Shown piece by piece: positions 23,800 to 58,222 of a DNA stretch of 64,000 nucleotides. The first letter of the stretch is position 1. Each line of letters begins with the position of its first letter. The notes under the pieces were generated by a model, which was not told the origin of the DNA, ran no database searches, and saw nothing but the letters and a program-made list of their open reading frames with translations. The stretch spans positions 62,001-126,000 of IMG/VR virus record IMGVR_UViG_3300024252_000004; one strand, written 5' to 3'. Made by a program: the position numbers and the translations under genes.

Positions 23800-24414
23800 A
23801 TGCATAAATGGATAAAGCAATGGACCGACATATTGGATTTTTGGGGACTTGAAAAAGAAGCTGAGGATTTGCTTGGCGACTCCGTATATGTTTATTCTGC
23901 AATACCAAATTGGGCAGAAGATTCTGTAAGGCAGAGCGGATTACTTAGCGGTAAATTAATTGCTAAGGACAAAGAGCTTTTGACTAAAATTCATCCAGAC
24001 GAAAAGGATAGAGAGCATTGGTTAAAAAGAATGGATGATCCATCTTTTGCAATAACTTATCAAGGGCCAAATGTTTTTTTCACTGTGCCTCCAAAAAGTT
24101 TATCTGAGCACCCTGTGAATAAGAATGATATGAAGATTTTGAAGATCAACCTGTCATCTTTGATTAATGATATTCCGGAGACAAAGCTTCATGGCCTTGA
24201 GCTTATACCTTATGAAACTGATGAAGAGTACGAATCGAACAAGAAAGATATCGATCGGCCAATAAGTTTTGAAGAGGCAGTAGAGTTATCCGAGGGAACA
24301 GAGGATGAGCAGTGGGCCGAGTATACTGGAGGGGGATTTTTTGCGGGAAATGTTCCGCATGCTGTAGTAATAACTCCTAATGGAAAAATCGATAGCAAAT
24401 ATATTGAGGTCTGA
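23800..24414 (+). CDS. Protein with conserved N-terminal leader; possible ADP-ribosyltransferase-like fold
   Basis: Leader MHKWIKQWTDILDFWGLEKEAEDL; YVYS...VRQSGLLS, VFFT and GKIDSKYI loosely resemble ART/DarT-like strands. Confidence 0.55.
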   Translation: MHKWIKQWTDILDFWGLEKEAEDLLGDSVYVYSAIPNWAEDSVRQSGLLSGKLIAKDKELLTKIHPDEKDREHWLKRMDDPSFAITYQGPNVFFTVPPKSLSEHPVNKNDMKILKINLSSLINDIPETKLHGLELIPYETDEEYESNKKDIDRPISFEEAVELSEGTEDEQWAEYTGGGFFAGNVPHAVVITPNGKIDSKYIEV

Positions 24415-25935
24415 ATGGGGTTAACTTTAAGCTCATACCAAAAGGCAATTATTGATGCCGTAAAGAATACTGATGATTGTCTTTCTATTCAGGCAGTAGC
24501 GGGATCTGGAAAGACCTATACTTTGTTAGAATGCATGAAGCATATTAATACATATAATGCTATCTTCATTGCATTCAATAAATCAATTGCGGACGAGCTT
24601 GCATCCAAGGTCCCAGCAAATTTTGCAGCAAGAACATTTCACTCAATTTGCTTTGAAGCATGGAGAAACTTCTGCGACGACAGAAGATTAAAAGTTGACG
24701 AAGACAAAGTCTGGTCAATCATTTGGAAACTCTTTGAAGAGGACGATGTAAAAACTTACGGGTATTTCATAAAGCAATTGGTCGGTCTTGCTAAGAATAT
24801 GGGGATTGGTACCGACTTGCTTCCTGATACATTAGATGCCTGGAACGAACTTGTTGACCGCCATGATCTCAGAATCCCCTCGGCAAGAGGCGATCAAACT
24901 GTTGGAATCCTATACGCACGGAAGGTGTTGGTAGAATCTTCAAAAGCACGATATGTAATCGATTTTGATGATATGCTATACCTTCCTTTGCTTTATGGGG
25001 CAACATTCAGAAGATTTGATATCATATTTATTGATGAGGCACAGGATTTGTCATCCATTCAACATGCCCTCCTTGAGTCTATGTTAAATGCAGATGGAAG
25101 ACTCATTGCTGTTGGTGATGAGCATCAGGCTATCTATGGATTTCGCGGTGCAGACTCCGAATCAATGGGAAAACTGGCAGATGATTTTGACTGTGTTAAA
25201 TTTCCTCTCAGCGTTACATATAGATGTGATAAAGCGATTGTAGAACACGCAAAGCAATGGGTCCCTCATATTGAGCCAAGGAAGTACGCTGGTGATGGCA
25301 TCGTAGAAGAGCTTGCAGAGTTCTCAGTTAATACTTTTGACGATGGCGACGTTGTCATCTGTAGAAACTCGGCACCATTAATCTCATTGGCATATGGGTT
25401 CATTAGGAGGGGGCGCAGGGTTAAGATGCTAGGGAGAGATATTGGCGAAGGGCTAATTCTCCTTATCGATAAGATGAGGACCGAGGACATTGATGAGCTT
25501 GAAGTTAAGCTTGAGAAATGGTATACGAGAGAAATGGAGAAGGCTCGTAAGAGAAGCAATGAGTCTCTTATGATTTCTGTTGAAGACAAGTATCAGTGTA
25601 TCAATATTTTCATTCAAAATTTAGATGAGGACTACAGGACAGTGGATGATCTTTGCTACGAGATTGCAAGGATCTTTAAGGAAACCGACGAGTCCATGTT
25701 AACCTTATGCACAGGTCACAAATCAAAGGGCCTTGAGTGGGAACATGTTTTCTGGCTTGAGAGGGGATTGATACCTTCTGCGTATGCTACCAAGGAGTGG
25801 ATGCTGCGCCAAGAGGATAATTTGGCATACGTCATCACGACGAGAGCCAAGCATCATTTGTCTTTCATTAGTCAGTCAGGATGGGTTCATGGCGAAAAAT
25901 ATATAGAAGAGAAAGATACTAATAATGAAGAATGA
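24415..25935 (+). CDS. UvrD/Rep-like SF1 helicase
   Basis: AVAGSGKT, AFNK, IDEAQD, VGDEHQAIYGFRGA, TYRC, HKSKGLEW, YVITTRAK. Confidence 0.9.
   Translation: MGLTLSSYQKAIIDAVKNTDDCLSIQAVAGSGKTYTLLECMKHINTYNAIFIAFNKSIADELASKVPANFAARTFHSICFEAWRNFCDDRRLKVDEDKVWSIIWKLFEEDDVKTYGYFIKQLVGLAKNMGIGTDLLPDTLDAWNELVDRHDLRIPSARGDQTVGILYARKVLVESSKARYVIDFDDMLYLPLLYGATFRRFDIIFIDEAQDLSSIQHALLESMLNADGRLIAVGDEHQAIYGFRGADSESMGKLADDFDCVKFPLSVTYRCDKAIVEHAKQWVPHIEPRKYAGDGIVEELAEFSVNTFDDGDVVICRNSAPLISLAYGFIRRGRRVKMLGRDIGEGLILLIDKMRTEDIDELEVKLEKWYTREMEKARKRSNESLMISVEDKYQCINIFIQNLDEDYRTVDDLCYEIARIFKETDESMLTLCTGHKSKGLEWEHVFWLERGLIPSAYATKEWMLRQEDNLAYVITTRAKHHLSFISQSGWVHGEKYIEEKDTNNEE
25917..25924 (+). promoter_or_regulatory. 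Candidate phage promoter motif TACTAATA
   Basis: 31 nt upstream of ATG 25956. Confidence 0.4.
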
Positions 25936-25955
25936 TTTGAATATCTGGAGTTATC

Positions 25956-27530
25956 ATGATGAGTCAGTTATCCTCATTAATATCATTATTATCAAAACTT
26001 GGATTTAATAGCGAGTCTGATTATATCCGAAAGTTTTCTATAGACTATAGCCAAGTCAAAGAGAGGCTTTATTCTAAAAAATTTGAAAAAGCTATTAAGA
26101 AGTATTTTTTTGGAAATGATTTAAGAGTTATACCGGAAGACTTTTGGGATGAGAGTTCTCAAGAGTATTCTGATTTTATGAAAATTTATCAAGATATAGC
26201 AGGAGCTTTAGAGTGGGCAATACCTTCTGATATAACTGAGCAGGACAGGGCCCATGCTCTCAATTGGGTTATTACGGTTTTTGTTAGAGACCCAGACAAA
26301 CATAATCCCCAGATACTTGGAACAAGCATTTTAAGCGAAGTAAGAAGTTCTTTGGAAACTTTTTTTCAGATAAAAGAGCAAGGTTTTGAGGGAATACTTC
26401 AAGAGCCTGATATCTATCAGTACCAGGATTATATAAGTTTTGTTCGTGCCGTCGAAAATGTCTCATACACATATAAAAAGCTTCTTGAAGAAAGGATTTC
26501 GACAAAGGATGTTGCCGGCGGAATGAATAAGATTTTTGAAGATGAAGAATATGAGGTTTACATTCCGACGAATAAAGCAGCAGCATGTCACTTAGGAAAA
26601 GGGACGGAGTGGTGTACGGCGGCTCCTGGCTTGAGCTATTACGAAGATTATCATAGTCCTGATGACCCACTGATTATCTTCATGCATAAAGCTGACGAAA
26701 AGCAGAGGGTTCAGTTTAGCTTTGGTTCTAAACAGTTTATGGATGTAAATGATGAAGATATTCCTTACCAGCTATTAACGAAACTAACCAGCAAGCTTCT
26801 CAATGGAGAAACTGTACCTGATAATGTAAAGAAGCTTGCAAAAGAATATGATGACAGCCACCTTAAGACATCTCCAGAAAATCTTCAATTAAATTCGGAT
26901 GATGTAAGCAAAGGATTTGGTGATTCCGAATCAGCTCATGTTATGTCCGAGAATCTGCATCTTTATTACGAAGAAAGAGAGGATGACCCTTATGATTTAA
27001 GGGGCAAAGCATTTACGGAGGGGGTAAAGAAAAGGTTTGATAGTTTTCAACATGATACGGATAAGGATAGGTTTTTCCGAAATATTATACAAATAGTAAA
27101 TGAAAATATTTACAAAGGGGTTACGAAATCATGGGCCTCTCGCAAAGTATTGGGCGCCTTTATTCATGAGGCAGATTCCGATATAGATTTCACGATTTCT
27201 CAATATACAAATGACTCAGACATAGTCGAAACCTTAGTCGAAAGATATAAATCCGACGCCCTCTCTGAATCGGGGTATTTGGGGGATATATATTCTGAGC
27301 TTGTACATAGAAATACCTCTTGGTCACGAAAGCCTAGGATTCTGATGAAAATATTTGAAAATATTTTAAAAAGTAATGTTAAATGGCAAGGTGCGTGGAG
27401 CTTCATGTCAAGAGCTATTAAGAAAATAAGCAAAGATTATGTACAGAAGCATATTGAAAAGTTCAAGGCAGATCCTGATGTGAATCCTGAAAATCTCAAT
27501 ATTGCCATTGAAGGCATACAACTTTTGTAA
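25956..27530 (+). CDS. Large phage protein with conserved N-terminal leader and PcfJ-like central segment
   Basis: Leader MMSQLSSLISLLSKLGFNSESDYI; AACHLGKGTEWCTAA...YYEDY...PLIIF. Confidence 0.65.
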   Translation: MMSQLSSLISLLSKLGFNSESDYIRKFSIDYSQVKERLYSKKFEKAIKKYFFGNDLRVIPEDFWDESSQEYSDFMKIYQDIAGALEWAIPSDITEQDRAHALNWVITVFVRDPDKHNPQILGTSILSEVRSSLETFFQIKEQGFEGILQEPDIYQYQDYISFVRAVENVSYTYKKLLEERISTKDVAGGMNKIFEDEEYEVYIPTNKAAACHLGKGTEWCTAAPGLSYYEDYHSPDDPLIIFMHKADEKQRVQFSFGSKQFMDVNDEDIPYQLLTKLTSKLLNGETVPDNVKKLAKEYDDSHLKTSPENLQLNSDDVSKGFGDSESAHVMSENLHLYYEEREDDPYDLRGKAFTEGVKKRFDSFQHDTDKDRFFRNIIQIVNENIYKGVTKSWASRKVLGAFIHEADSDIDFTISQYTNDSDIVETLVERYKSDALSESGYLGDIYSELVHRNTSWSRKPRILMKIFENILKSNVKWQGAWSFMSRAIKKISKDYVQKHIEKFKADPDVNPENLNIAIEGIQLL

Positions 27531-28874: not shown

Positions 28875-29534
28875 ATGGAAATTGAAAGAGTGCCAATTAG
28901 AGTTATCGGAGCAAGAGATCCAAGGGAAAAAAAGGCTATCAACACGACCTCATCCTGCAAAGGTATAGGGCGTAGCTTCAGTCCGTTTATTCTTGGGCCA
29001 GTGAGCCTATATCCTGGGGCAGTTGCAGCTCAGGCATTAAACGTGGAGAATGCTTGGCAGTTCTCTAAGGTGTATAAATGTCATACAGATGACAATGGAG
29101 ATCCAACAGATGAATATTTTGAGTGGGCTAAAAAGGGCTGGCGTGACACTCGCGCTCATCGTTACCCTATGGGAAAAGGAGCCATCCCAGAATACTCGTG
29201 GTGGAACGGAAAGAAGCTTGGATACATTGAGGCCAGAAAGCGGATATATTTCCCCCTATATGCCGCAGCGGTAATAAGAACAAAAGCTTTCAACCTTCTA
29301 AAGGAAGGCTACAATGCTGGAAGACAGATTACCTTATGGGATTATGATGGTTACAACCATCTTGCCCTGGATATGACACTGAAAGATGTTATTAATAATC
29401 CGAGTAGACCTATGGGGCACGCCTTTGTGTTGGCGGCCTTAATTCAAGATGAATTCAAGAGGGTCTCTGATGGACAAACGAATAGCGAGCCTGTACAAAG
29501 CATTGAAGAAGATAGGTTTCAAGAAAGAAGCTGA
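28875..29534 (+). CDS. DUF6939-like protein (possibly NADAR-related)
   Basis: INTTS, FSPFILGP, VENAWQFSKVY, YIEARKRIY, HAFVLA. Confidence 0.62.
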   Translation: MEIERVPIRVIGARDPREKKAINTTSSCKGIGRSFSPFILGPVSLYPGAVAAQALNVENAWQFSKVYKCHTDDNGDPTDEYFEWAKKGWRDTRAHRYPMGKGAIPEYSWWNGKKLGYIEARKRIYFPLYAAAVIRTKAFNLLKEGYNAGRQITLWDYDGYNHLALDMTLKDVINNPSRPMGHAFVLAALIQDEFKRVSDGQTNSEPVQSIEEDRFQERS

Positions 29535-30285
29535 GCAGATTTTAAAGCTTAGCGAAGAAGATGACATCTTCACGATCTCCCCTGAGATGAAAAGATTAAG
29601 GGATTCTGGTAGATATGAGATAACCCGAGAAGATGATGACGATATAGAATCTTATAGGGTTTCTCCATCAGGTGTCTCTGGTTGGCCTGAGCAGTTTCAA
29701 TACATGAGACATCCGGACTCAGGCGAGATGATCCCGAGGCGCTCTTTTCGATACAACTCTGATATGTCCGAGGTATACGAAGAGGAAGACGAATTTGGTA
29801 TAACTTCAAGGACAAGGCTTAAGGACGGTTGGATCGAGAAGCTGCCCGAAGAAGGACCATTAATGTATAGGGGCATGTCTTATGAGGAATGGATGTTCAT
29901 TCAGGAGACAGGCAGGATAGAATCTCTTGGCGATTATAACCTTGGCGATGAGCAGATAGGATTGACTTATTTTTCAACGGAGCCAGACTCAGCAGCTCAT
30001 TATGCTCATGGGTTTGCACCATCCGAATACAAGGCAACGCCGGATAAACCAGCCTACGTCATTGGTGTACCAAGGCAAGAAGGTGAGCCCGTCGCAGGAG
30101 TGGGTGAACATGAGGTTGGAGTTCGTGGCCCCGTAGATGCATCCTTAATTGAAGAGGTATGGATTGGTATGCCATATTTTGCTACCACCAATGGAAGGGT
30201 AGACGTAATTGACGATTATCGAGGAAGACGATCCGGTTCTCGTTATCTACCATCAGTAAGCGTAGCATGGAAGAGGGTCAAATAA
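29470..30285 (+). CDS. Putative R-S-E clade ADP-ribosyltransferase with conserved N-terminal leader
   Basis: Leader MDKRIASLYKALKKIGFKKEAEQI; LMYRGMS (R), TYFST (S), GEHEVGV (ExE); start moved to ATG 29470. Confidence 0.7.
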   Translation: MDKRIASLYKALKKIGFKKEAEQILKLSEEDDIFTISPEMKRLRDSGRYEITREDDDDIESYRVSPSGVSGWPEQFQYMRHPDSGEMIPRRSFRYNSDMSEVYEEEDEFGITSRTRLKDGWIEKLPEEGPLMYRGMSYEEWMFIQETGRIESLGDYNLGDEQIGLTYFSTEPDSAAHYAHGFAPSEYKATPDKPAYVIGVPRQEGEPVAGVGEHEVGVRGPVDASLIEEVWIGMPYFATTNGRVDVIDDYRGRRSGSRYLPSVSVAWKRVK

Positions 30286-31912: not shown

Positions 31913-32907
31913 GACGATACCTTATCAAGACCTACTGCTACGAATCCGGACTTTTCTATTTGTCTAAAAATCTTGGAGATAAGCTACTGTCCGAAGGGCA
32001 CGTTGTAGTCTACGCTCCTAAGGCTAAGTATATTTTGGATGGAAGAGTCTATAGGAGAGTTTATCCCAGCCAGAAGAACCCAGATGAGTTTAAGCGCGAT
32101 ATCATCCTGCCATTCACGGCAAAGCGTCCTGTTAGCTACCTGATGCACAACGCAATCATTAAATATAAGATTGATACAGTCATTTCTTTTGAGACTCTTA
32201 TGGAGAAAGGGCAATGGGTGGCAAAGATTAAAGCACGAGACAAGGTTAAGATGATTGATGTTCCGATGGTTGAATGGGTAACTCCTTCATATGTCAAGAA
32301 CGGGTCTTACGATGTGTTCGATGAGATTTGGTGCCTAACTGATTTAACTAAGCAGGTATTTGACATGCCCAAAGCCAAACGGGTAAACTTTGACCTTGTA
32401 GACCGGAGCATTTTTTATCCGCCGGAATCCAAGCAGAACGATATAGTCACATTCTATCATGCAGGAAGTCTGAATCCAGACCATAGCACAAAGAATACGG
32501 ACTTGGTTGTGGCTGCTTTTAACAGGTTTCTTAGGGTAAATAATCCCAAGGCAAAGCTTATATTCACTGGCTCAACAGAGCGTATTGCTATTGATAACCA
32601 TACTAATATTTTACATATAGATAGGGTACTTAATAGGAACGAAATCGGTAAAATATATAGAGAAGCTGATGTCGTATTGGCACCTTCTCAAAAGGAGGGG
32701 CTGGGTTTGAGTTTATATGAGGCCCAAGCTTGCGGTTGCAAAATCATTACCACAGATGCTGCACCGATGAACGAAGTTGAAGCAGACTACCTATGCAGAG
32801 TAGATAAGCTAAAAAGGGACAGGGGATTTATCCCATTGGCCTTTGTTAACGAAGACGAAATATATAATCAAATCAAACAAGCGTATGAGGATATCATCAA
32901 TGGCTAA
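31909..32907 (+). CDS. GT4-like glycosyltransferase
   Basis: APSQKEGLGLSLYEAQACGCKIITTD. Confidence 0.78.
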   Translation: MRRYLIKTYCYESGLFYLSKNLGDKLLSEGHVVVYAPKAKYILDGRVYRRVYPSQKNPDEFKRDIILPFTAKRPVSYLMHNAIIKYKIDTVISFETLMEKGQWVAKIKARDKVKMIDVPMVEWVTPSYVKNGSYDVFDEIWCLTDLTKQVFDMPKAKRVNFDLVDRSIFYPPESKQNDIVTFYHAGSLNPDHSTKNTDLVVAAFNRFLRVNNPKAKLIFTGSTERIAIDNHTNILHIDRVLNRNEIGKIYREADVVLAPSQKEGLGLSLYEAQACGCKIITTDAAPMNEVEADYLCRVDKLKRDRGFIPLAFVNEDEIYNQIKQAYEDIING

Positions 32908-34342
32908 ATACAAAGTAAGCGTAAGTGAAAAAGACGCAGCAGTAAAACCAAAGTCCGAACAAGATGTCGCAAATGAAAACGCAGCACTTATGGACGCATT
33001 CGAAACACCGGCCGAAACACCGGCCGAAACACCGGCTGAGGTGGCACCAGAGCCGGAGCGTAAGCTCGATCCGGACATTCTGGCGAGGCTTAAGGCGAAG
33101 AAAACAAAAGTAAAAAAGGAGGAACCTGTGCCTGAATTAGTTGAAGAGCAAGAGGTTAGCATTAATATTGGAGTTGTAGGAGTTGGACAGGCTGGTTCCC
33201 GTCTTGCTGAGCAGTTTCACAAGTTAGGGTATGACGTAGGCGTCATCAATACATCCGCACAGGATCTTAGGTTCGTTGACGTGCTTCCAACCCAGAAGCT
33301 ATTGCTTGAGGGAAGCCTTGGTGGTACAGGTAAGGACCTCGATCTCGGCCGAGAAATCTTCTCTGATAACACAGAGGTATGTGCTCAGTTCATTGATAGG
33401 ATTGCAGAAGGAAATGACATGCTTTTCCTTGCAATGTCTGGTGGAGGAGGTACTGGCTCAAGCTCCGTTGATACAATGGTTGAGCTTTGCTATTCGACCG
33501 GCATGCCTCTTGGGCTTATCTTCGTGCTTCCAAAAGCGACTGAAGATGCTCAGTCTAAGAAGAACTCCATTGAGACTCTTGCAAAGCTTGCAAGAATGAC
33601 AGCAGACGATAAGGTGTCTTGTTTGGTCGTAGCAGATAACGCACGTATCGAGCAGATCTATGGCGGGCTTGGTCAGTCTCAGTTCTGGAGCACGGCTAAC
33701 AACGCAATCGTTGAGCCTATCCACTTGTTCAACAGCCTTACTTCTCAGGCATCCAAGTACACCTCTATGGACCCGTCCGACTTTGGTAAGGTAATTTCTT
33801 GCGGTGACTGCTCGGTGTATGGAATGGTTGAAGTTGAAGATTACATGGATGAGGTTGGCATTGCAGAAGCAATGATGGACTCTCTTAATAGCAACATGCT
33901 CGCAGAAGGATTCGATCTTGCACAGACCAGAACCGGTGGCGTTATCATCGTAGGTTCTGAGGAAGCATTAGAGAACCTTCCGGCAATCAACATTGATTAT
34001 GCGTTCCACGTTATCTCTGAGCAGACTGAGGATGCCAACATCTATCGAGGCGTTTATGCGCAGGAGGGTGTTGAGAATGTAAGGGTATATACTTGGTTTG
34101 CAGGACTTGGTCTTCCTCAGGATAGAATCGAGAATCTTAAGAAGGAAAGCAAGGACGCGACTGCTGCTGCGGCAGCTAAGGAAGGAAAGAGAGCTTCCGC
34201 AATGACTCTTGACCTTGAAGAGAACAAGGTATCTTCCGTTAAGGATGAGATTCACAGAAAGATTCGAGGCAAGAAGTCTGGCTTTGGTAAGCTACAAGGT
34301 GGCACAAGGCGTTCTTTGATTGACCGAAGAAGAAAGAGATAA
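32900..34342 (+). CDS. Tubulin/FtsZ-family GTPase (phage TubZ/PhuZ-like)
   Basis: VGVGQAGSRLA, INTS..D, GGTGKD, SGGGGTGSS tubulin signature, DPSDF; start moved to ATG 32900 behind GAGG. Confidence 0.9.
   Translation: MAKYKVSVSEKDAAVKPKSEQDVANENAALMDAFETPAETPAETPAEVAPEPERKLDPDILARLKAKKTKVKKEEPVPELVEEQEVSINIGVVGVGQAGSRLAEQFHKLGYDVGVINTSAQDLRFVDVLPTQKLLLEGSLGGTGKDLDLGREIFSDNTEVCAQFIDRIAEGNDMLFLAMSGGGGTGSSSVDTMVELCYSTGMPLGLIFVLPKATEDAQSKKNSIETLAKLARMTADDKVSCLVVADNARIEQIYGGLGQSQFWSTANNAIVEPIHLFNSLTSQASKYTSMDPSDFGKVISCGDCSVYGMVEVEDYMDEVGIAEAMMDSLNSNMLAEGFDLAQTRTGGVIIVGSEEALENLPAINIDYAFHVISEQTEDANIYRGVYAQEGVENVRVYTWFAGLGLPQDRIENLKKESKDATAAAAAKEGKRASAMTLDLEENKVSSVKDEIHRKIRGKKSGFGKLQGGTRRSLIDRRRKR
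33002..33037 (+). repeat. 12-bp tandem repeat x3 (GAAACACCGGCC, encodes ETPA) in the tubulin N-terminal extension
   Basis: Read directly; third copy ends GCT. Confidence 0.85.
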
Positions 34343-46808: not shown

Positions 46809-46820
46809 CATGGGAAGATT

Positions 46821-47171
46821 ATGAATATATTGAAAATATATGCTATGATAAAACAAAGGCTGGAGAATTTAAAACTTTCCGAGGATTTCTTTACGCTTGA
46901 TAATGTTCCTTTGGAGGCGCTCCCTATATATCTAGGGCAAAGTTTCAATGGATATAGTAATGAGGATGGAAGCTTTTCTTTCCAAAATAGCTTCATTGAT
47001 ATCATAGAACTTGGGCAACCATTTAGTACAGATGAAACCGAAGAGGAGACTGTGAATCGTTTGGTATCTTTTCTCAAAGAGTACCGTGCAGAACTTGGGC
47101 AAGACCCGTTTCAGTTGGTTATATCTGTTAAAGATACGAAAGATTGTTACGGAATCTTAGCTGTACATTAA
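46821..47171 (+). CDS. Hypothetical protein
   Basis: 116-aa in-operon ORF. Confidence 0.55.
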   Translation: MNILKIYAMIKQRLENLKLSEDFFTLDNVPLEALPIYLGQSFNGYSNEDGSFSFQNSFIDIIELGQPFSTDETEEETVNRLVSFLKEYRAELGQDPFQLVISVKDTKDCYGILAVH

Positions 47172-47184
47172 ACCAGGAGAAGTA

Positions 47185-47295
47185 ATGACTATTATAATTA
47201 ATTATGGAAAAAGTACATTTATAGAGTCTGATGCTTATGAAGATGAAAATCAAAACCATGATACAATAAGAATAGTGTCTGGTATGGAGGAGTAA
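47185..47295 (+). CDS. 36-aa small protein (MTIIINYGKSTFIESDAYEDENQNHDTIRIVSGMEE)
   Basis: Hand-translated; GGAG RBS upstream; fills the gap before YeaH; not in the ORF track. Confidence 0.45.
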   Translation: MTIIINYGKSTFIESDAYEDENQNHDTIRIVSGMEE

Positions 47296-47296
47296 A

Positions 47297-48466: not shown

Positions 48467-51036
48467 AAAAAAGATTAATCGAAGTAGACAAATGGTGTCA
48501 GAAGAAGTGTGATGAGATGGGCGTAGATTATTTTCCAATCAATTGGGAAGTTGTGCCTGAAGAGGTCATGCTTGAGGTAATGAGCTATGGTCTTCCGACC
48601 AGAGCACGACACTGGACATACGGTCAGAGTTACAAATACCAGAAGCTTAATGGTGAAATGGGTATGTCAAAGGTTTACGAGCTAATCCTTAACAACAATC
48701 CATCTTATGCTTTCCTTCTTGATACCAACCCTGACATTGCACAGATTATGGTCATCGCTCACTGTGTCCATGAGGATGCTAAAATTATTACTTTGGATGG
48801 AGTAAAGCCCATCTCTGAAGTAAAAAAGGGCGATAAAGTATTTACACATAAAGGTAGAATTTCTACTGTTAACTGGTGTAAAGAGACTGCAAGAAAAAAA
48901 GAAATTACTGAATTGAAAGTAAGGGGTTCCGATGAGGTTTATAGGTTTACATCTGATCATAAGATTTATGTAGAAACTGATGTTGGCCCATCTTGGGTAA
49001 AAGTTTCTGAAATAAGGGAAGATGATAGAATCATTTACCCTAAGGCTTCTCAGAACGAGGAGTCTGCTCTCGAAGAGATTTTAATTGAAATCGAAAATAT
49101 TCAGAGTAATGATAGGCTGTTTAGGAAAAAAGCTTTCCATGAAAGCAATGGATATACTTTAAAATTAAATGAAGAATCCGGAAGGATGATCGGGCTATAT
49201 ATTGCTGAAGGCTATCTTAGCGGAACACAAGTTCATTTTGCGATGCACAAGGATGAAGACGATTATCATGCAGCAATTTCAAATGCAATTAATCAGTTAT
49301 CTCCGAAACTTCCTGTACATGTATCCAAAAGAGAGCGTGATAATTCTGGCATTGTTCATTTTTCTGACAAATGGATTGGAAAATGGCTTGAAGAAAGCTG
49401 TGGGAAAGGTTGTGAGAACAAGAAGATACCTGATTTTGTATTTGCAAACAATGTTCCTCTTGAGTTTAAAAAGGGAATTGTAAGAGGGCTTTTCGAAGGT
49501 GATGGTTATTTTGATAATGAAAATAGAAGCTCTTCTTTTTCTACCACAAGCGATCTGCTTGCAAATCAGTTAAAATTTCTTCTGAATTCATTTGGAATTT
49601 TTTCATCTATTTCTTCAAGAAACAGGAAATCTTTTGATATAAAGGGGGAAAGAAAAACTTCTTATGAATTGGTTTTAAGTGGCGAAGACAACTTGGAGTT
49701 ATATAACATAGTTGGATATGAGACTGAATATGCTCCGACCAGAACTTGGTCTTTCTCTGCAAAGAAAGATGAATATATAGCTGGACAAATCGAATGGGTT
49801 CGCTCATTCTCTACAGAAAAGATTCAAAGTTTTTGGGACATGGAAGTGGAAGGAGATCATAGCTTTGCGCTATATGGCGGAATTGTAGCTCATAACTGTT
49901 ACGGACACAGCGCATTCTTCAAGAATAACTACCTATTCAAGCAGACAGACAGGAAGATGGTTTACCATGCTGCTGAACGTGCTGCAAGAATCGAAGGCTA
50001 TATTGAGAGGTATGGTTTAGAAAGAGTTGAACGCATCATGGATATTGGTCTCTCCGTTGAGAAGAATATTGATTGGCATAAAGGTTTATTCCGTGAGAAA
50101 TACCCTGGCAGAAGAAAGGTGGTCAAGAGTCGTAAGATTGGTGAATTCGAAGATGTACTTGGAATCAAAAGTCCAGAGAGAAAAGAGGTAACGGTTAACA
50201 CGAAGTTCCCACCTGCAAAAGAGATTGATATCAACTGGTTCTTGATGACTTACTCTTCTAAGCTTGAAGATTGGGAGCGTGATGTCCTCTCTATTATCCG
50301 AGAAGAATCCTTTTACTTCTACCCTCAGTACATCACAAAGATTATGAACGAAGGCTTTGCAAGCTATATTCATGCAGAACTCATGTATGTCATGGGCGAG
50401 GAGATGCTTTCCGCAGCAGAGTATATTGATTTCGTTAAGATTCATGAGAGAGTTGTTCAGCCAGGACGTGATCCATTCAATATGAACCCATACTTCTTAG
50501 GCTTTACGATTTTCAACGACATTAAGAAAAGATGGGATGAGCTATACGAGAAAGGTGAGTCAACCATTACAGGTTTTCAGAAGATTCTTGAGGTATGCGA
50601 GGAAGAAGATGATGTATCATTCTTGAACATCTACCTCACTCAGGAGATTGTTGATGAGCTTAAGATGTTCACCTATGTTCAGAGAAGGGACCCGAGAAGT
50701 AAAAACCAATACGTTCAGGTTCAGAGCAATAAGGTTAAGGACATTGTTGAGTCAATGACCAGCAAGCTTCATAACTACAGAGTTCCTATGATTGCGATTA
50801 CTAACGTAACATCTATGAGTCTTGAGCTTGAGCATGGAAGCCCAGAGATTGGAACGATTGCTTATAAGCATCTTCCAAAGGTTATGGAGTATCTATATGA
50901 GGCATGGGGCAATGTGATTGACCTGAAGACGTGGGACACGTCAGGCAATCCATTCCACTTCACTTTCGATGAGGAAGGTTTCAGTGATGTCGATCCAGAA
51001 AAAGGTCTCACAATTATTAGAAGGAAACAAAAGTAA
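48463..51036 (+). CDS. spoVR: SpoVR/YcgB-family protein containing an intein
   Basis: GLPTRARHW, YELILN, AH|CYGHSAFFKNN after splicing, TKIMNEGFASY, NPYFLGF. Confidence 0.92.
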   Translation: MKKRLIEVDKWCQKKCDEMGVDYFPINWEVVPEEVMLEVMSYGLPTRARHWTYGQSYKYQKLNGEMGMSKVYELILNNNPSYAFLLDTNPDIAQIMVIAHCVHEDAKIITLDGVKPISEVKKGDKVFTHKGRISTVNWCKETARKKEITELKVRGSDEVYRFTSDHKIYVETDVGPSWVKVSEIREDDRIIYPKASQNEESALEEILIEIENIQSNDRLFRKKAFHESNGYTLKLNEESGRMIGLYIAEGYLSGTQVHFAMHKDEDDYHAAISNAINQLSPKLPVHVSKRERDNSGIVHFSDKWIGKWLEESCGKGCENKKIPDFVFANNVPLEFKKGIVRGLFEGDGYFDNENRSSSFSTTSDLLANQLKFLLNSFGIFSSISSRNRKSFDIKGERKTSYELVLSGEDNLELYNIVGYETEYAPTRTWSFSAKKDEYIAGQIEWVRSFSTEKIQSFWDMEVEGDHSFALYGGIVAHNCYGHSAFFKNNYLFKQTDRKMVYHAAERAARIEGYIERYGLERVERIMDIGLSVEKNIDWHKGLFREKYPGRRKVVKSRKIGEFEDVLGIKSPERKEVTVNTKFPPAKEIDINWFLMTYSSKLEDWERDVLSIIREESFYFYPQYITKIMNEGFASYIHAELMYVMGEEMLSAAEYIDFVKIHERVVQPGRDPFNMNPYFLGFTIFNDIKKRWDELYEKGESTITGFQKILEVCEEEDDVSFLNIYLTQEIVDELKMFTYVQRRDPRSKNQYVQVQSNKVKDIVESMTSKLHNYRVPMIAITNVTSMSLELEHGSPEIGTIAYKHLPKVMEYLYEAWGNVIDLKTWDTSGNPFHFTFDEEGFSDVDPEKGLTIIRRKQK
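48763..49896 (+). mobile_element. Intein (378 aa) with LAGLIDADG homing endonuclease in SpoVR
   Basis: Starts CVHEDAKII, ends IVAHN followed by Cys; IGLYIAEG and RGLFEGDG blocks. Confidence 0.92.
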
Positions 51037-51806: not shown

Positions 51807-54800
51807 ATGTTTATTCAAAATATCTCTCAAGAAGTATGGGGCGGAGAAGCTGGTAAGTATAGGCTTCGTGATTCCGAAGGACAACCCATCGATCTAACAC
51901 CTGAAGACACCTGTTTGAGAGTCGCAAAAGGGTTAGCATCACTTGAGCCAAAACCAGAAGAATGGGAAGTTGAGTTTTCCAGAATTCTATTAGAAGGTAA
52001 GTTCGCAGGTGGCGGACGTATTATGGCCAATGTCGGCGCTGGCGACCTCAAGCGAGACGCCAGCCCGATTAACTGTACGGTGCTCAGGCAGATCCCTGAC
52101 TCGATGGATGGCATCATGCAGACCGCCAAAGAATCTGCGATGACACTGCGCACAGGCGCTGGTGTGGGCTATGATTTCAGCCCAATTAGGCCAAGCGGCG
52201 CGTATGTATTTGGCGCAGGAGCAGAGACTTCTGGCGTCATTTCTTTTATGAAAATCTTCGATGCAACGTGCAGCACAGTTATGAGCGGCGGTGGCAGACG
52301 TGGAGCCCAAATGGGTTGCCTCGACATTCAGCATCCAGAGATTGAGAATTTCATCACTTGTAAAAGAGAAGATGGCGTTCTTAGATATTTTAACTTATCT
52401 GTTTTAATCACAGATGCTTTCATGACGGCTGTTAGAGATGATGCCATGTGGAAGCTATGGTTCTGGGAGCGTTGCGAGAAATGTGACATAGAGGAAATTG
52501 GTGCAGATGAGGTTGCAGTGATGAAAGCTGGAGATATCCCTTTCAGATATCCTGAATACGATTACTTCAGTTATGCAGCAGATCACACTGAAGTCCTTAG
52601 CGGTAACTGCGAAGTAGGAACTATCTTTAAGAAGAGAGTATTCAAGGTGCTTAGAGCCGTTGAACTCTTTGATAAGATTATGACATCAACATACAATTTC
52701 GCCGAGCCTGGATTCATTCTTATCGATAGGGTGAACAGAGATAATATCCTTTGGTTCTGTGAAGTTATTAGAGCTACGAATCCATGTGTACCTTCTGATA
52801 CCTGGGTTCATACAGAAGAAGGCCCGAAGCAGGTTTCCGATCTTATAGGTCAAGAATGCACCTTGATGGTGAACGGAAAGCCATATCAATCAGAAGGATT
52901 TTTTAAAACCGGATATAAATCGGTTTTGAATTTAGAAACCAAAGAAGGCTTCAAATTAAGATTAACTCCTAATCATAAAGTTATGGTAGTAAGCTCCAAT
53001 AATGGTGATAAAATTATTTCCAATTGGAAAGAAGCAGGCGAAATTGAGATTGGTGATAAAGTTATTCTTCATGATCATAGTGATTCTGCTTACTGGTTAG
53101 GAACAGACAAAATGAATGGAGTCTACTCTGTAGATCAGGGATACCTGATGGGGCTACTCGTTGGGGACGGAACGCTGAAGAAAGATTCTGCTATCCTGTC
53201 CGTTTGGAGTTCTGACAATGAAAATGGTTATGAGTCTATTATGTCTCGTGTAAATATGTCGATAAGACACCTTAAGAAAAGAGCAGATTTTAAGGGTTGG
53301 CACAAAATAGCTGGCCGAAATGAGTATAGGCTTAAGTTGTCTGGAATAAGAGATTTGGCGCATGAATTTGGAATGAGCAATCAAAACAAGTTTATTACTC
53401 CTAAAATGGAGAAAGCATCTCATGCCTTTTCTGCCGGGTTCTTAAGGGGGCTTTTTGATGCAGATGGCTCGGTCCAAGGCGATCAAAGCAAAGGAGTTTC
53501 TGTAAGGCTTGCTCAAAGTAACTTAGAGACCTTGGAAGCTGTGCAAAGAATGCTTCTTAGATTTGGAATCGTATCTAAGATTTACAAATTCAGGCGAGAA
53601 AGTGGAGAGTCACTTTTGCCTAACGGGAAAGGTGGAAAGAAACTTTATAAGACAAAAGCTCAGCACGAATTAGTTATTAGCAAAAGTAATTTAAAAACTT
53701 TTGAGAGATTGATTGGCTTTGCTGATGACACTAAGCATTCTAAATTAGTAAACTTATTAAGTGACTACAAAAGAGAATTAAACAAAGAAAGTTACGCAGT
53801 AACGATATCATCAATTAGTGACGGAGGCATTTGCGACGTTTATGACGTACAGGTTCCAGGTATAAACGCTTTTGATGCAAACGGCATTTATGTTCATAAT
53901 TGTGGCGAACAGCCTTTACCTGCCAATGCAAGTTGCCTATTGGCTTCAATGATTTTAGCTCCATATGTGATGAATAAATTTGCGGATGATTCCTTTTTTG
54001 ATTGGGAGGCTTTCGAAGTAGATATTGCTGTCGCTACAAGGATGATGGACAACGTTGTTGAGATCAACAACCTGCCTCTGCCTGAAATGAGAGAGCAGAT
54101 TCTCCAGAAGAGAAGGCATGGCTTAGGCTTCACAGGTCTTGGCACTGTATTTAACATGCTCGGCATGTCTTATGGTGATGATGCTTCTCAGGCGTTCGCA
54201 GATAAGATTGCATACACGATTGCAAAAGTATCTCTATTTATGAACATGGAGCTTGCGCAAGAGAAAGGACATGCTCCCATTTTCGACACGATAGTGTCCA
54301 GACAGAACGCTATTGATTCAGGATATATGAAGAGGTTGTTATCAACCTTTGATGACGATTTAAGGCATGGATTAGAGCAGGAGATTCTTGAGCATGGTCT
54401 CAGATTCTCTCACGCTACCAGCATTGCACCAACAGGAACCATGAGTTTAACTTGGGGTAACAACTGTAGCAATGGTGTTGAGCCGAGCTTCACTGATGAG
54501 TACGCAAGAAACTTCAGGCAGCATGGAAAGAAGACGAAGGTTCAGGAAATCGTAAGAAGTCTTGAATACCATCTATGGATAGAGATGTATGGTGACAGAG
54601 AGCTACCAAGTCATTGGAGGGTTTCCAATGACCTATCTGTCGAAGATCATATCAACATCCAGGCAAAGATTCAGAAGTGGGTTGACTCTGCCGTATCTAA
54701 GACGGCAAATGTTCCTACTGATTACCCATTCGAGGATTTCAAAAAGATCTACATGATGGGATGGGAGAAGGGGCTTAAGGGCATCACCACCTTCAGGTAT

Positions 54801-54989
54801 AATCCTGAGGCGTTTTCAGGTGTCCTTGTTCGCAAAGAGGATCTCGAAAATACGAAATACGTTTTCATCCTCGCAGATAATGAAGAAATAACAGTATCCG
54901 GAAGTGATACAATTGAGTACGATGGTGAGCTTCACAATGCGGCCAATTTGTTTGATGCGCTGAAAGAAGGCATGTATGGGGATATGTAA
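51807..54989 (+). CDS. nrdJ: Class II (B12-dependent) ribonucleotide reductase NrdJa with intein
   Basis: GGRIMAN, INC, GGRRGAQM, EPG, TNP|CGEQPL, RHGLGFTG, IAPTGT, KGITTFR. Confidence 0.93.
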   Translation: MFIQNISQEVWGGEAGKYRLRDSEGQPIDLTPEDTCLRVAKGLASLEPKPEEWEVEFSRILLEGKFAGGGRIMANVGAGDLKRDASPINCTVLRQIPDSMDGIMQTAKESAMTLRTGAGVGYDFSPIRPSGAYVFGAGAETSGVISFMKIFDATCSTVMSGGGRRGAQMGCLDIQHPEIENFITCKREDGVLRYFNLSVLITDAFMTAVRDDAMWKLWFWERCEKCDIEEIGADEVAVMKAGDIPFRYPEYDYFSYAADHTEVLSGNCEVGTIFKKRVFKVLRAVELFDKIMTSTYNFAEPGFILIDRVNRDNILWFCEVIRATNPCVPSDTWVHTEEGPKQVSDLIGQECTLMVNGKPYQSEGFFKTGYKSVLNLETKEGFKLRLTPNHKVMVVSSNNGDKIISNWKEAGEIEIGDKVILHDHSDSAYWLGTDKMNGVYSVDQGYLMGLLVGDGTLKKDSAILSVWSSDNENGYESIMSRVNMSIRHLKKRADFKGWHKIAGRNEYRLKLSGIRDLAHEFGMSNQNKFITPKMEKASHAFSAGFLRGLFDADGSVQGDQSKGVSVRLAQSNLETLEAVQRMLLRFGIVSKIYKFRRESGESLLPNGKGGKKLYKTKAQHELVISKSNLKTFERLIGFADDTKHSKLVNLLSDYKRELNKESYAVTISSISDGGICDVYDVQVPGINAFDANGIYVHNCGEQPLPANASCLLASMILAPYVMNKFADDSFFDWEAFEVDIAVATRMMDNVVEINNLPLPEMREQILQKRRHGLGFTGLGTVFNMLGMSYGDDASQAFADKIAYTIAKVSLFMNMELAQEKGHAPIFDTIVSRQNAIDSGYMKRLLSTFDDDLRHGLEQEILEHGLRFSHATSIAPTGTMSLTWGNNCSNGVEPSFTDEYARNFRQHGKKTKVQEIVRSLEYHLWIEMYGDRELPSHWRVSNDLSVEDHINIQAKIQKWVDSAVSKTANVPTDYPFEDFKKIYMMGWEKGLKGITTFRYNPEAFSGVLVRKEDLENTKYVFILADNEEITVSGSDTIEYDGELHNAANLFDALKEGMYGDM
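52785..53900 (+). mobile_element. Intein (372 aa) with LAGLIDADG endonuclease at the RNR NP-C-GEQ active-site cysteine
   Basis: Starts CVPSDTWV, ends IYVHN followed by Cys; GLLVGDG and RGLFDADG blocks. Confidence 0.93.
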
Positions 54990-55987: not shown

Positions 55988-57289
55988 ATGCTAGAAAATC
56001 ATCCTTTAGAGAAAAGAATTAACTACGTTCTTGATACATCTGCGTTAATCTCAAACCCCAAGCTATTAGAACAGTTTGAATCTTGCACACACCTCATTCC
56101 GATGGAAGTGCTACAAGAACTTGACAACCTAAAAACACGATCTGATCATGTTGGAAAAAATGCACGTTACGTGAATAGATTCCTTGATCAGCTTCGACAG
56201 CAAGGTAGTCTGTTTGAAGGCGTCATCGTAGACGAAGGAGTGACCGTAAAGGTCGTTTCTAAGCACGATGCTCTGCTCCCAATCTTTGAGGACACTGTAG
56301 ATAATAGAATTATTTCAACAGCGTTTCACCTCTCTGAAAAGATTGATGTTGTATGCCTCTCAAATGATATCGCATTCCGAGTGAAATGTGATGCAATCGG
56401 TTTAAAAGCCGAATCAGTAGACGCTGATGCTGTAAAGGTTACAGATTCTGGTTACACAGGCTTTACTGAGCTTGAAGTTTCAAATGAGATAATCGAAGCA
56501 TTCTATGAAGATGGTTACCTCGATTTTGAAGATGTAGAATTCTTTCCTAACCAGGGAGTTCTGTTAGTTGCTCCGGGGTCCACCGCTCTGTGCGTTGCTA
56601 ACGGCTGCAATACTCTTGACAAATTAGAATACACGAAAGGGCGCAAGTTTAATGTTGAAGGAGTTACTCCTCGCAACAAAGAGCAGACTATCGCCCTCGA
56701 ATTGCTTCTTGACCCAGATATTCCTTTGGTAACTCTGAACGGTATTGCTGGCTGTGGTAAAACCTTGCTTGCAATTGCGTCTGCCATGTCGCAGCATAAG
56801 CAGGGATTGTATAAGAAGATTATCATTTCCAGACCGATTGAAAGTACGAGTAACGATATTGGTTTCCTGCCCGGTACGAAAGAAGAGAAGATGGCGCCTT
56901 GGGTTCAGCCGATTTTTGACAACCTTGAAGTGTTGTACAGAAAGAAGGGTCTTCATTACATCGAATTGATGATGCAGAAAGGCCACCTTGAGATTGAGGC
57001 AATCTCTCACATTAGAGGACGAAGCCTACCCGACACCATCTTTATTGTTGACGAGGCACAGAACATTACGAGGCATGAGGCGAAGGCCCTCTTGACAAGA
57101 ATGGGTGAGAGATCCAAAATCGTTCTTATTGGCGATCTTGATCAAATTGACTCACCTAAGCTCAGTCATAAAAATTCTGGCTTAAGCGTTATCATTGAGG
57201 CATTCAAGGATACAGAGCTTGCAGGTCACGTCAAATTACTCAAGGGAGAACGTAGCGCACTTGCTACTTACGCAGCGACAGTACTTTAA
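55988..57289 (+). CDS. phoH: PIN-PhoH (PhoH2/YlaK-like) protein
   Basis: VLDTSAL, ELDNLK, DNRI (PIN); GIAGCGKT, GFLPG, IRGRS, VDEAQN, GDLDQID. Confidence 0.92.
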   Translation: MLENHPLEKRINYVLDTSALISNPKLLEQFESCTHLIPMEVLQELDNLKTRSDHVGKNARYVNRFLDQLRQQGSLFEGVIVDEGVTVKVVSKHDALLPIFEDTVDNRIISTAFHLSEKIDVVCLSNDIAFRVKCDAIGLKAESVDADAVKVTDSGYTGFTELEVSNEIIEAFYEDGYLDFEDVEFFPNQGVLLVAPGSTALCVANGCNTLDKLEYTKGRKFNVEGVTPRNKEQTIALELLLDPDIPLVTLNGIAGCGKTLLAIASAMSQHKQGLYKKIIISRPIESTSNDIGFLPGTKEEKMAPWVQPIFDNLEVLYRKKGLHYIELMMQKGHLEIEAISHIRGRSLPDTIFIVDEAQNITRHEAKALLTRMGERSKIVLIGDLDQIDSPKLSHKNSGLSVIIEAFKDTELAGHVKLLKGERSALATYAATVL

Positions 57290-57298
57290 GGAGATTCT

Positions 57299-57493
57299 AT
57301 GAGCGAAGAGAAGAGAGTTCCACTTTACATTCATGATGACTTCGACCCAGAGCTACAAAGGCGATGGGAAGAAGAGCAGAAATTAAAGAAAGAAGTCCCG
57401 GTTAGTCGATACAGGTCAAATACTGATGACCCACTTGTTGTTGACCTTACCATTGATTTTAATGATGGAAATGTCGATTTTACTTTGAATTAG
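57299..57493 (+). CDS. Small hypothetical protein
   Basis: AAGGAG RBS, 64 aa. Confidence 0.6.
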   Translation: MSEEKRVPLYIHDDFDPELQRRWEEEQKLKKEVPVSRYRSNTDDPLVVDLTIDFNDGNVDFTLN

Positions 57494-57499
57494 AATCCT

Positions 57500-57507: not shown

Positions 57508-57516
57508 AAGCAGGTT

Positions 57517-57536
57517 TGTCGTAGGAGTCTGCGACA
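57517..57536 (+). promoter_or_regulatory. RNA hairpin occluding the lysozyme RBS and start
   Basis: TGTCGTAG-GAGT-CTGCGACA: 8-bp stem with one G-U pair; SD AGGAG in stem/loop; last base is the A of ATG. Confidence 0.55.
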
Positions 57537-58222
57537 TGAACCAGAAGATTCAAAAACTTGCAAAGCTATTAGCTCATCTTGGCCACTCGAAAGAGGCGGC
57601 TGAGGTGGGCTTCTTTGCGTTGGCACAAGAGGTTTATAAGATTCAGTCAGGTGATAATCCGTGGTCGTTGTCTGGTGGAGATGCAAAATATCATCAGATG
57701 ATTATGGACGCCAACCCTAAGGTTAATTGGAATAAGCTACAGATTGGTCAAGAGATCACTTTGCCAGCGAAGCCAAGCTATCCGAACAAGGGCATGCAGC
57801 CGTCCCGGTCAGCTTATGACATCATTAAGTCTCATGAAAAGCTGAAGCTTAGAGCTTACAATGACGGATTCGGTAATATGACTATTGGGTATGGTCATGT
57901 AATTAAGAAAGGGGAATCATTCTCTTCTATCTCAGAGCCTAAAGCGAAGCAGTTGCTTGTCAGCGATGCTACCGCTGCTGCCAAAGCTATTCAGCAGCTT
58001 GTCACTTCAAAGTTAAATCAGAATCAATTTGATGGACTTACCAGTTTGATCTTCAATATAGGAAGAGGGAACTTTGCAAGATCATCTATGCTTAAGAAGC
58101 TTAACTCTGGAGATTTTCAGGGAGCTGCAAGAGAGTTTGTATCTTTCAACAATGCTGGCGGAAAAGAGAATGCTCATTTGACAGGAAGAAGAAAAACCGA
58201 GGCCGCCCTATTTGTGAGCTAA
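57536..58222 (+). CDS. Leader + LysM + GH24 phage lysozyme
   Basis: Leader MNQKIQKLAKLLAHLGHSKEAAEV; YKIQSGDNPW...LQIGQEITLP (LysM); HEKLKLRAYNDGFGNMTIGYGH, NQNQFD, RRKTEAALF. Confidence 0.9.
   Translation: MNQKIQKLAKLLAHLGHSKEAAEVGFFALAQEVYKIQSGDNPWSLSGGDAKYHQMIMDANPKVNWNKLQIGQEITLPAKPSYPNKGMQPSRSAYDIIKSHEKLKLRAYNDGFGNMTIGYGHVIKKGESFSSISEPKAKQLLVSDATAAAKAIQQLVTSKLNQNQFDGLTSLIFNIGRGNFARSSMLKKLNSGDFQGAAREFVSFNNAGGKENAHLTGRRKTEAALFVS

What the first reader, a model, noticed from the sequence alone, without database searches (positions are those of the whole stretch)
23800..58222. Position-conserved ~24-aa N-terminal leader on four unrelated proteins: candidate virion packaging/ejection signal
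Seen: ORFs starting at 23800 (MHKWIKQWTDILDFWGLEKEAEDL), 25956 (MMSQLSSLISLLSKLGFNSESDYI), 29470 (MDKRIASLYKALKKIGFKKEAEQI) and 57536 (MNQKIQKLAKLLAHLGHSKEAAEV) align without gaps from Met1: I/L5, L/W8, L12, G16, K/S19, E20, A/S21, I/L/V24. What follows the leader is unrelated in each: ART-like, PcfJ-like, R-S-E ART, LysM-lysozyme. Known: T4 internal proteins and Alt carry a short N-terminal capsid-targeting sequence removed by the prohead protease. Inference: this amphipathic helix-G-helix leader is a modular address tag that loads enzymatic cargo into the head for injection. Two of the four genes also carry the TACTAATA motif upstream.
Basis: partly seen in the sequence, partly recalled or inferred. 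Interest (0 to 1): 0.9.

Follow-up and report, generated by a model that had tools for sequence, protein, structure and literature searches.

The report
Portable two-helix tag on phage proteins
Four unrelated proteins of this 395-kb uncultured marine phage start with the same short two-helix segment, which is a divergent form of an undescribed, phage-only tag found on thousands of different proteins and probably docks them to a shared partner, perhaps the virus particle.

Summary
The four ORFs exist, and their first 24-28 residues align without gaps from Met1.

The leader belongs to a much larger family. A degenerate DNA pattern of the leader register found 68 matches in IMG/VR, and every one lies at the start of an ORF. 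They define a strongly conserved ~32-residue module, consensus MIKELIKLANHLDSKGLxKEADYLDxIIKKA. AlphaFold2 predicts helix 2-14, a turn, then helix 18-33 (pLDDT 94).

A profile of the module finds 3593 protein clusters among 1.84 billion representatives. Of 93 single-copy hits among the best 150, 91 start exactly at Met1. The other 57 carry two or three copies, some C-terminal or internal. Cargo is very diverse. The module has no Pfam or PHROG family and is almost absent from 596 Gb of cellular genomes.

The window's leaders are divergent members. Leader c is 61% identical to a leader on an unrelated protein in another phage. Homologues of cargo a and b lack the leader or carry a different N-terminal motif.

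A modular address tag is well supported. The destination, capsid loading for injection, remains an inference. It is favoured by the cargo types and by a variable slot near terminase and portal in one lineage. It is weakened by the lack of a cleavage motif and by the non-N-terminal copies.

The parts
23800..23883 (+). Leader a (residues 1-28): divergent copy of the two-helix module
   Evidence: The homologue P0004 begins exactly where the leader ends.
23800..24414 (+). Gene a, 204 aa: leader plus a cargo domain of unknown family (no Pfam or PHROG hit)
25956..26039 (+). Leader b (residues 1-28). The database call starts at the second Met, 25959.
25956..27530 (+). Gene b, 524 aa. Cargo domain (about residues 29-300) is shared with 55 metagenomic proteins that carry other N-terminal motifs. 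The PcfJ label is not supported.
29470..29553 (+). Leader c (residues 1-28), the best match to the wider family
29470..30285 (+). Gene c, 271 aa. The C-terminal domain (126-270) is homologous to a module of a Planktothrix phage 'large polyvalent protein'. R134, S169-T170 and E215 are invariant, which fits an R-S-E ADP-ribosyltransferase.
57536..57619 (+). Leader d (residues 1-28)
57536..58222 (+). Gene d, 228 aa: leader + LysM (residues 33-77) + GH24 phage lysozyme (98-222)

Best explanation
What it is. The four leaders are divergent copies of a portable two-helix hairpin of about 32 residues (helix 2-14, a turn at the invariant Gly16, helix 18-33). Uncultured, mostly marine tailed phages place it at the very N-terminus of many otherwise unrelated proteins. 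A disordered linker rich in acidic residues, Gly, Pro and Ser usually follows it.

How it most likely works. It is a docking or address module. The hairpin binds one common partner and so brings diverse cargo to the same place. Cargo here includes a lysozyme, a probable ADP-ribosyltransferase and two unknown enzymes. Elsewhere it includes LysM proteins, cell-wall hydrolases, zinc ribbons, and PilZ, EF-hand and HEAT domains.

Most likely destination. I favour the assembling virion (prohead interior, scaffold or portal), so that the cargo travels with the DNA into the next host. This would resemble T4 internal proteins and Alt, or cargo fused to a scaffolding-protein hairpin.

Shown versus inferred. 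Shown: the module exists, is portable, sits at protein ends, is under protein-level selection and is specific to phages. Inferred: that it docks to a partner, and that the partner is part of the virion.
For: Module and spread.
- 68 of 68 DNA-pattern matches in IMG/VR lie at ORF starts.
- An HMM scan of 478 kb of those loci gives 107 hits, 87 of them with column 1 on a start codon.
- There are 3593 representative proteins at E<=1e-3, and 91 of 93 single-copy top hits are at Met1.
- AF2 gives pLDDT 93.8 and a helix-turn-helix.

Selection acts on the protein. 51% of codon pairs that encode the same residue use different codons.

Specific to phages. The same pattern in 596 Gb of cellular genomes gives 71 hits. 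Only 3 loci, all short MAG contigs, are real members.

Portability.
- Cargo is non-homologous.
- Homologues of cargo a and b lack the tag or carry a different one.
- Leaders of the c and d subtypes sit on unrelated cargo elsewhere.

Many copies per genome. At least 13 occur in 53 kb sampled from a 223-kb contig, often in tandem arrays.

Pointers to the virion.
- In nine loci of one lineage, which represent fewer distinct phages, a variable-cargo leader gene sits two genes upstream of terminase large subunit and portal.
- 8 terminase and 6 portal genes occur among 81 large ORFs flanking leader genes.
- Cargo c matches a module of a polyvalent protein, a class proposed to be injected with the DNA (PMC5512222, PMC7824862).
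- Peptidoglycan hydrolases and LysM recur as cargo.
Against: - There are no virion proteomics, because every carrier is an uncultured phage.
- No conserved protease site follows the module.
- The module also occurs at C-termini, internally and in 2-3 copies, and some ORFs of 34-50 aa consist of the module alone. A cleaved N-terminal targeting peptide does not predict any of this.
- Surface residues are almost invariant across contigs of 60-330 kb. That could instead point to a very conserved partner, possibly a host one.
- In the window, genes a-c lie among nucleotide-metabolism, helicase and glycosyltransferase genes, not head genes.
- The terminase and portal enrichment is modest and includes near-duplicate loci.
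- The receptor has not been identified.
Confidence: 0.45

Rival explanations
1. The hairpin is a docking module, but its partner is not the virion. It recruits cargo to a conserved host component or to an intracellular phage structure such as a replication or assembly compartment, the membrane, or a chaperone or translocase.
For: - Even the polar surface positions (N10, H11, D13, K19, E20, D22, Y23, D25) are extremely conserved across very different contigs. This fits a slowly evolving partner.
- Window genes a-c sit among early or metabolic-type genes.
- Cargo such as PilZ, EF-hand, AP2, RING and zinc ribbons looks like cytoplasmic takeover or regulatory proteins.
- No cleavage motif follows the module.
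Against: - LysM and peptidoglycan hydrolase cargo acts outside the cytoplasm.
- The module is virtually absent from cellular proteomes.
- One lineage has a leader-gene slot next to terminase and portal.
Confidence: 0.3
2. The hairpin is mainly a self-association domain. Hairpins pair into helical bundles. Proteins with two or three copies would cross-link a network (an inner body or condensate), and single-copy proteins would join it as clients. This is compatible with either destination above.
For: - 57 of the best 150 hits carry 2-3 modules, often one at each end.
- Module-only mini-ORFs exist.
- AF2 of a 95-aa two-module protein gives four helices with pTM 0.64 from a single sequence.
- A two-helix hairpin rarely folds stably on its own (general knowledge).
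Against: - The packing of the two hairpins in the model could not be inspected.
- Foldseek found no bundle match.
- The top-150 list is biased towards multi-copy proteins, because their scores add up.
- Self-association alone does not explain the near-invariant polar surface.
Confidence: 0.15
3. The similarity among the window's four N-termini is chance resemblance between generic amphipathic helices, or reflects a DNA/RNA-level element such as a translation-initiation or recombination sequence.
For: - Pairwise identity is only 4-9 of 24, and leader a is not recovered by leave-one-out.
- Scores of a, b and d against the external HMM are individually non-significant.
Against: - All four are in the exact Met1 register, and all are in the top 10 of 1011 segments.
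- The pattern gives 0 matches in 100 shuffles.
- Intermediates link c and d to the canonical family.
- The four-leader HMM finds a new leader in a relative.
- Synonymous codons vary freely at conserved residues, which argues against a nucleic-acid element.
Confidence: 0.03

Closest known systems
T4 capsid-targeting sequence on internal proteins IPI-III and Alt (reviewed in PMC3012670, PMC9958956)
   Same: It is a short N-terminal peptide shared by otherwise unrelated proteins. The genes sit in hypervariable loci where only the tag is conserved (compare the variable slot). The cargo includes an ADP-ribosyltransferase-like enzyme. Function does not depend on the nature of the cargo.
   Different: This module is a longer, folded two-helix hairpin of about 32 residues. 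No protease cleavage motif follows it. It also occurs at C-termini, internally and in repeats. Copy numbers are much higher. Packaging has not been demonstrated. Sequence similarity to the T4 tag was not tested.
C-terminal helix-turn-helix coat-binding domain of P22-type scaffolding proteins, also used to load foreign cargo into P22 particles (my own knowledge)
   Same: It is a small helix-turn-helix hairpin at a protein end that docks onto the inner capsid surface, and cargo fused to it is encapsidated. Some proteins here are acidic, helical and end in the module (for example L043 866-1420).
   Different: No sequence or Foldseek match was found. Here the module is mostly N-terminal and sits on enzymes rather than scaffolds. 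One weak Pfam hit to the T7 scaffolding family (E 1e-4) was not reproduced with T7 gp9 (best E 0.15).
Encapsulin cargo-loading peptides and microcompartment encapsulation peptides (my own knowledge)
   Same: These are terminal (N or C) short helical tags, joined by a flexible linker to diverse cargo, that bind the inside of a protein shell.
   Different: Those tags are shorter single helices or extended peptides, and they are cellular systems. This module is a phage-only hairpin.
Polyvalent proteins of phages and conjugative elements (PMC5512222)
   Same: Cargo c is homologous to one module of such a protein (tblastn E 2e-17). The domain repertoire is similar: ART-like enzymes and peptidoglycan hydrolases. 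Delivery with the DNA has been proposed.
   Different: In polyvalent proteins many effector domains are fused into one giant polypeptide with a head-anchoring domain. Here each effector is a separate small protein with its own tag.

Membership tests
New 'LANxLD-G-KEAD' two-helix N-terminal module family (defined here) | Match to the family HMM in the Met1 register | tested here: met
   With the HMM built without window sequences: c E 0.04 (rank 1 of 1011), a rank 3, d rank 7, b rank 10, all with column 1 on the ATG. The scores of a, b and d are weak on their own. c and d are linked through intermediates.
New 'LANxLD-G-KEAD' two-helix N-terminal module family (defined here) | Portable: the same module on non-homologous cargo, and cargo homologues without it | tested here: met
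New 'LANxLD-G-KEAD' two-helix N-terminal module family (defined here) | Helix-turn-helix hairpin fold | tested here: inconclusive
   AF2 on the 70-sequence alignment gives pLDDT 93.8, H2-14 and H18-33. The model is of a canonical member. The window's own leaders were not modelled separately.
T4-type capsid-targeting sequence | Short N-terminal peptide shared by unrelated proteins of one phage | tested here: met
T4-type capsid-targeting sequence | Ends at a conserved prohead-protease cleavage motif and is removed | tested here: not met
   No conserved motif follows the module in 149 family members or in the window's four. Actual cleavage cannot be tested here.
T4-type capsid-targeting sequence | Tagged proteins are present in the virion and ejected | not testable with these tools
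   All carriers are uncultured.
T4-type capsid-targeting sequence | Sequence similarity to the T4 tag | not tested
P22-type scaffolding coat-binding helix-turn-helix | Structural match to the solved hairpin | tested here: not met
   Foldseek against the PDB found no hit with E<1, only generic hairpins and TPR-like repeats.
SAP / HeH DNA-binding motif | Match to the Pfam SAP/HeH profiles | tested here: not met
   No such family appears among the Pfam hits of 44 + 150 module proteins or of the window proteins. The resemblance in helix 1 plus 'KGL' is by eye only.
Sec/Tat signal peptide or SAR anchor (considered for lysozyme d) | Hydrophobic core of 12 or more residues | tested here: not met
   The leader is charged and amphipathic, MNQKIQKLAKLLAHLGHSKEAAEV.
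R-S-E ADP-ribosyltransferases (cargo c) | Arg, Ser-Thr and Glu catalytic motifs, and a profile match | tested here: inconclusive
   R134, S169-T170 and E215 are invariant in the three-sequence alignment. No Pfam hit at E<=1. In the polyvalent protein the homologous segment lies just upstream of the ART-PolyVal hit, not on it.
PcfJ-like (cargo b) | Match to the Pfam PcfJ-like profile | tested here: not met
   No Pfam hit at E<=1. Some homologues carry PF20530 or PF01816.

The most novel reading that the evidence does not exclude
The hairpin is a universal, sequence-recognisable packaging-and-injection tag used by a large, uncultured group of marine phages, with genomes from about 60 kb to about 400 kb. 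On this reading the roughly 3600 tagged protein clusters are a ready-made catalogue of virion-delivered effectors (an 'injectome'). Different phage lineages would use interchangeable tags, such as the second N-terminal motif seen on homologues of cargo a and b, matched to their own capsid interior.
Probability: 0.35. Interest if true: 0.9.

Novelty: new variant of a known kind. Interest (0 to 1): 0.78.

Why it matters
If the tag marks delivered or co-localised cargo, one 32-residue profile would pick out thousands of candidate host-takeover and counter-defence effectors in marine phage dark matter. Neither Pfam nor PHROGs currently covers this module. It would also give a compact, folded handle for loading foreign proteins into phage particles.

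Even without a settled destination, this is one of the more widespread undescribed phage protein modules. There are 3593 clusters at 50% identity, and the positional rule (Met1) is unusually strict. It also shows that the same cargo families are re-tagged with different N-terminal motifs in different phages, which makes the question of how phages address proteins directly testable.

Tried and rejected
- Megablast of the region against GenBank phages found no match.
- tblastn of the consensus module and of a canonical module protein against 50,697 phage records found no leader hits. No cultured carrier was found.
The first collection pattern had too few specified bases.
- PDB sequence searches for a, b and c gave nothing significant.
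- PHROG and Pfam annotation of genes next to leader genes (L011, L043, L012) was almost all blank. The small-terminase assignment of the ~196-aa gene is therefore only positional.
- The T7 scaffolding link rested on one Pfam hit at 1e-4. phmmer with T7 gp9 did not support it.
- Foldseek of both AF2 models gave only generic helical hits.
- TACTAATA as a shared promoter is not significant: 4 matches against 2.3 expected.
- Literature searches for the motif strings and for capsid-targeting tags in jumbo phages found no description of this module.
- Walking the genome 10 kb beyond the window found no further leader.
- A DNA-level explanation was rejected on codon variation.
Full report
**Source and observation**

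The window is part of IMG/VR contig IMGVR_UViG_3300024252_000004, a 395-kb uncultured phage genome. It has no near relative among 50,697 GenBank phage records. The nearest matches to one of its proteins, at about 35% identity, are Thermus phages and metagenomic huge phages.

The four ORFs exist as described. Their first 24-28 residues align without gaps from Met1, with M1, L12, G16 and E20 invariant.

Start-codon support is as follows.
- Database gene calls agree for a and d.
- b is called from its second Met.
- c is called from a TTG inside the leader (P0001). However, the 52%-identical orthologue P0002 conserves a leader-like N-terminus, and a GAGGG precedes ATG 29470.

Domain labels were checked separately.
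- d is LysM plus a GH24 phage lysozyme.
- a, b and c have no Pfam hit even at E<=1.
- The C-terminal domain of c matches a segment of a Planktothrix phage 'large polyvalent protein' (E 2e-17). R134, S169-T170 and E215 are invariant. This fits an R-S-E ADP-ribosyltransferase but does not prove one.

**Is it more than chance?**

Within the window, an HMM of the four hits only the four, which is circular. Leave-one-out recovers c (E 1e-5), d (0.02) and b (~1) as the best non-training hit. It misses a.

The decisive evidence came from outside the window. I wrote the leader register as a degenerate DNA pattern. It gave four matches in the window and none in 100 shuffles. I then scanned IMG/VR with a version that fixes K19.
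- It returned 51 loci with 68 matches, and every match lies at the start of an ORF.
- Seven matches are copies of the window's own genes.
- The other 61 define a far better conserved N-terminal segment: M-[IL]-K-E-L-I-K-L-A-N-H-L-D-x-K-G-[LF]-x-K-E-A-D-Y-L-D-x-I-I-K-K-[A]-[AS].
- Conservation then stops, and a linker rich in acidic residues, Gly, Pro and Ser follows.

The same pattern run on 596 Gb of cellular genomes served as a negative control. It gave 71 scattered single hits. Only three loci, all short MAG contigs, are true members. The rest are internal chance matches.

**Size and rules of the family**

An HMM scan of the 478 kb of fetched loci, which is not tied to a start codon, found 107 hits at E<1e-3. 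In 87 of them column 1 falls on a start codon.

A 70-sequence profile (A3) was searched against 1.84 billion representative proteins.
- It found 3593 proteins at E<=1e-3 and 707 at E<=1e-10.
- Among the best 150, 93 have one copy, and 91 of those begin exactly at residue 1.
- The other 57 have two or three copies, often one at each extreme end or internal copies separated by acidic linkers.
- Module-only ORFs of 34-50 aa also exist.

All sources are metagenomes, many of them marine, and none of the ten proteins looked up carries a functional name, only 'hypothetical protein' or gene-call strings.

No Pfam or PHROG family covers the module. No paper in the library contains the motif strings. 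The comparative jumbo-phage survey I checked does not mention such a tag.

AlphaFold2 on the alignment predicts helix 2-14, a turn at 15-17 and helix 18-33, with pLDDT 93.8. Foldseek finds only generic hairpins.

Conserved residues are encoded by freely varying synonymous codons. Selection therefore acts on the peptide, not on the DNA or RNA.

**The window's leaders as members**

They are divergent. They lack the canonical D13 and D25 (a keeps D13), and their individual HMM scores are weak. They are nevertheless tied to the family in four ways.
- Leader c is 17/28 identical (E 2e-7) to the leader of an unrelated 332-aa protein on a 232-kb contig that also carries canonical copies.
- Leader d is 12/21 identical to a leader that scores 34 bits against the canonical HMM.
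- The HMM of the window's four alone detects another N-terminal leader gene on the contig of c's orthologue (E 9e-4).
- All four align in the Met1 register.

**Modularity**

- Cargo is non-homologous across the family. It includes LysM, cell-wall hydrolases, zinc ribbons, and PilZ, EF-hand, HEAT, AP2 and RING domains.
- A homologue of cargo a starts exactly where the leader ends (P0004). Another (P0005) carries a different N-terminal helix.
- All 55 homologues of cargo b lack the hairpin. They begin with other conserved N-terminal motifs instead. One of these (..K.LRQIIRES..) is shared with P0005, which is a homologue of the unrelated cargo a.
- That second motif is absent from the window and from 735 ORFs of hairpin-bearing loci.

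The same cargo families are therefore re-tagged in different phages. This is what an address label matched to a lineage-specific receptor would look like.

**Where does the tag send its cargo?**

This step is inferred. Four observations favour the virion.
- In one lineage the gene order is conserved across nine fetched loci, which represent fewer distinct phages: a ~347-aa gene, one or two leader genes of 110-296 aa, a ~196-aa gene (small terminase by position only), terminase large subunit, then portal.
- The cargo in that slot is not homologous between phages. This recalls the hypervariable internal-protein loci of T4-like phages.
- 8 terminase and 6 portal genes occur among 81 large ORFs flanking leader genes.
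- The cargo includes a polyvalent-protein module and peptidoglycan hydrolases. Delivery through the tail would let these act in the periplasm and the cytoplasm respectively.

Five observations count against it or leave it open.
- No cleavage motif follows the module.
- C-terminal, internal and multi-copy arrangements exist.
- Surface residues are nearly invariant across very different genomes. This could mean a conserved non-virion partner.
- Window genes a-c lie among nucleotide-metabolism, helicase and glycosyltransferase genes.
- No proteomic data exist.

A self-association role is also possible. It rests on the bivalent proteins and on an AF2 pTM of 0.64 for a two-module protein. It is not exclusive of either destination.

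**Verdict**

'Capsid loading for injection' is the leading hypothesis, at roughly 0.4-0.45, and is untested.

The closest known systems are the T4 capsid-targeting sequence, scaffolding-protein coat-binding hairpins and encapsulin or microcompartment targeting peptides. This module is unrelated to them in sequence, is larger and folded, obeys different positional rules and is far more widespread. I therefore rate it a new variant of a known kind.

Noticed in passing
P0162-P0215 (homologues of window 25956-27530) and P0005 (homologue of window 23800-24414): There seems to be a second kind of N-terminal motif: MKLIxENWRKYLNE.., MIRIKIIKESK.., and ..K.LRQIIRES... The last form occurs on homologues of both cargo a and cargo b, which are unrelated families. 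It may be an alternative address tag used by other phage lineages. It is absent from the window and from 735 ORFs of hairpin-bearing loci. No paper holds these strings.
   Followed up: partly
L039 5983-6870 (+) and L045 1445-2539 (-): Two proteins with internal tandem copies of the module share a further conserved segment of unknown family, of the form ..RY.PD..GVQ..R..DG..Q... Pfam has no hit for either.
   Followed up: no
window 51807-54989 (+): The ribonucleotide reductase large subunit (1060 aa) is interrupted by an intein with a LAGLIDADG endonuclease, according to the precomputed Pfam families of the identical gene.
   Followed up: no
window 44524-51036 (+): A PrkA/YeaG-like 'serine kinase' (643 aa) is followed, after two small ORFs, by a SpoVR-like protein (389 aa) and an 857-aa protein. 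The best phage matches are Thermus phages and metagenomic huge phages. It looks like a phage copy of the bacterial yeaG-yeaH-ycgB stress module.
   Followed up: no
window 32843-34342 (+): There is a weak PHROG match to tubulin PhuZ (E 1.5e-4, residues 111-263). The long TTG-started ORF probably over-extends the gene at its 5' end.
   Followed up: no
window 55988-57289 (+): This is a PIN-PhoH fusion protein (433 aa), lying one small ORF (57299-57493) upstream of leader gene d.
   Followed up: no
window 25917, 32601, 57500, 63653 (+): All four TACTAATA copies are on the + strand and lie just upstream of gene starts (-39 for b, -36 for d). One-mismatch variants sit at -40 and -38 of two other genes. 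The count is not significant (4 against 2.3 expected), but the motif could be part of a promoter.
   Followed up: partly
window 29470-29534 (+): Leader c overlaps the 3' end of the upstream DUF6939 gene (28875-29534) by 65 nt. This is probably why the database gene call starts at an internal TTG and truncates the leader.
   Followed up: yes
window 58684-60462 (-): Two minus-strand genes sit between leader gene d and the tail-fibre-like genes at 60713-62562. One is a 303-aa protein whose N-terminus looks like a lipoprotein signal (..LTSC, by eye). The other is a Trypsin_2 protease.
   Followed up: no
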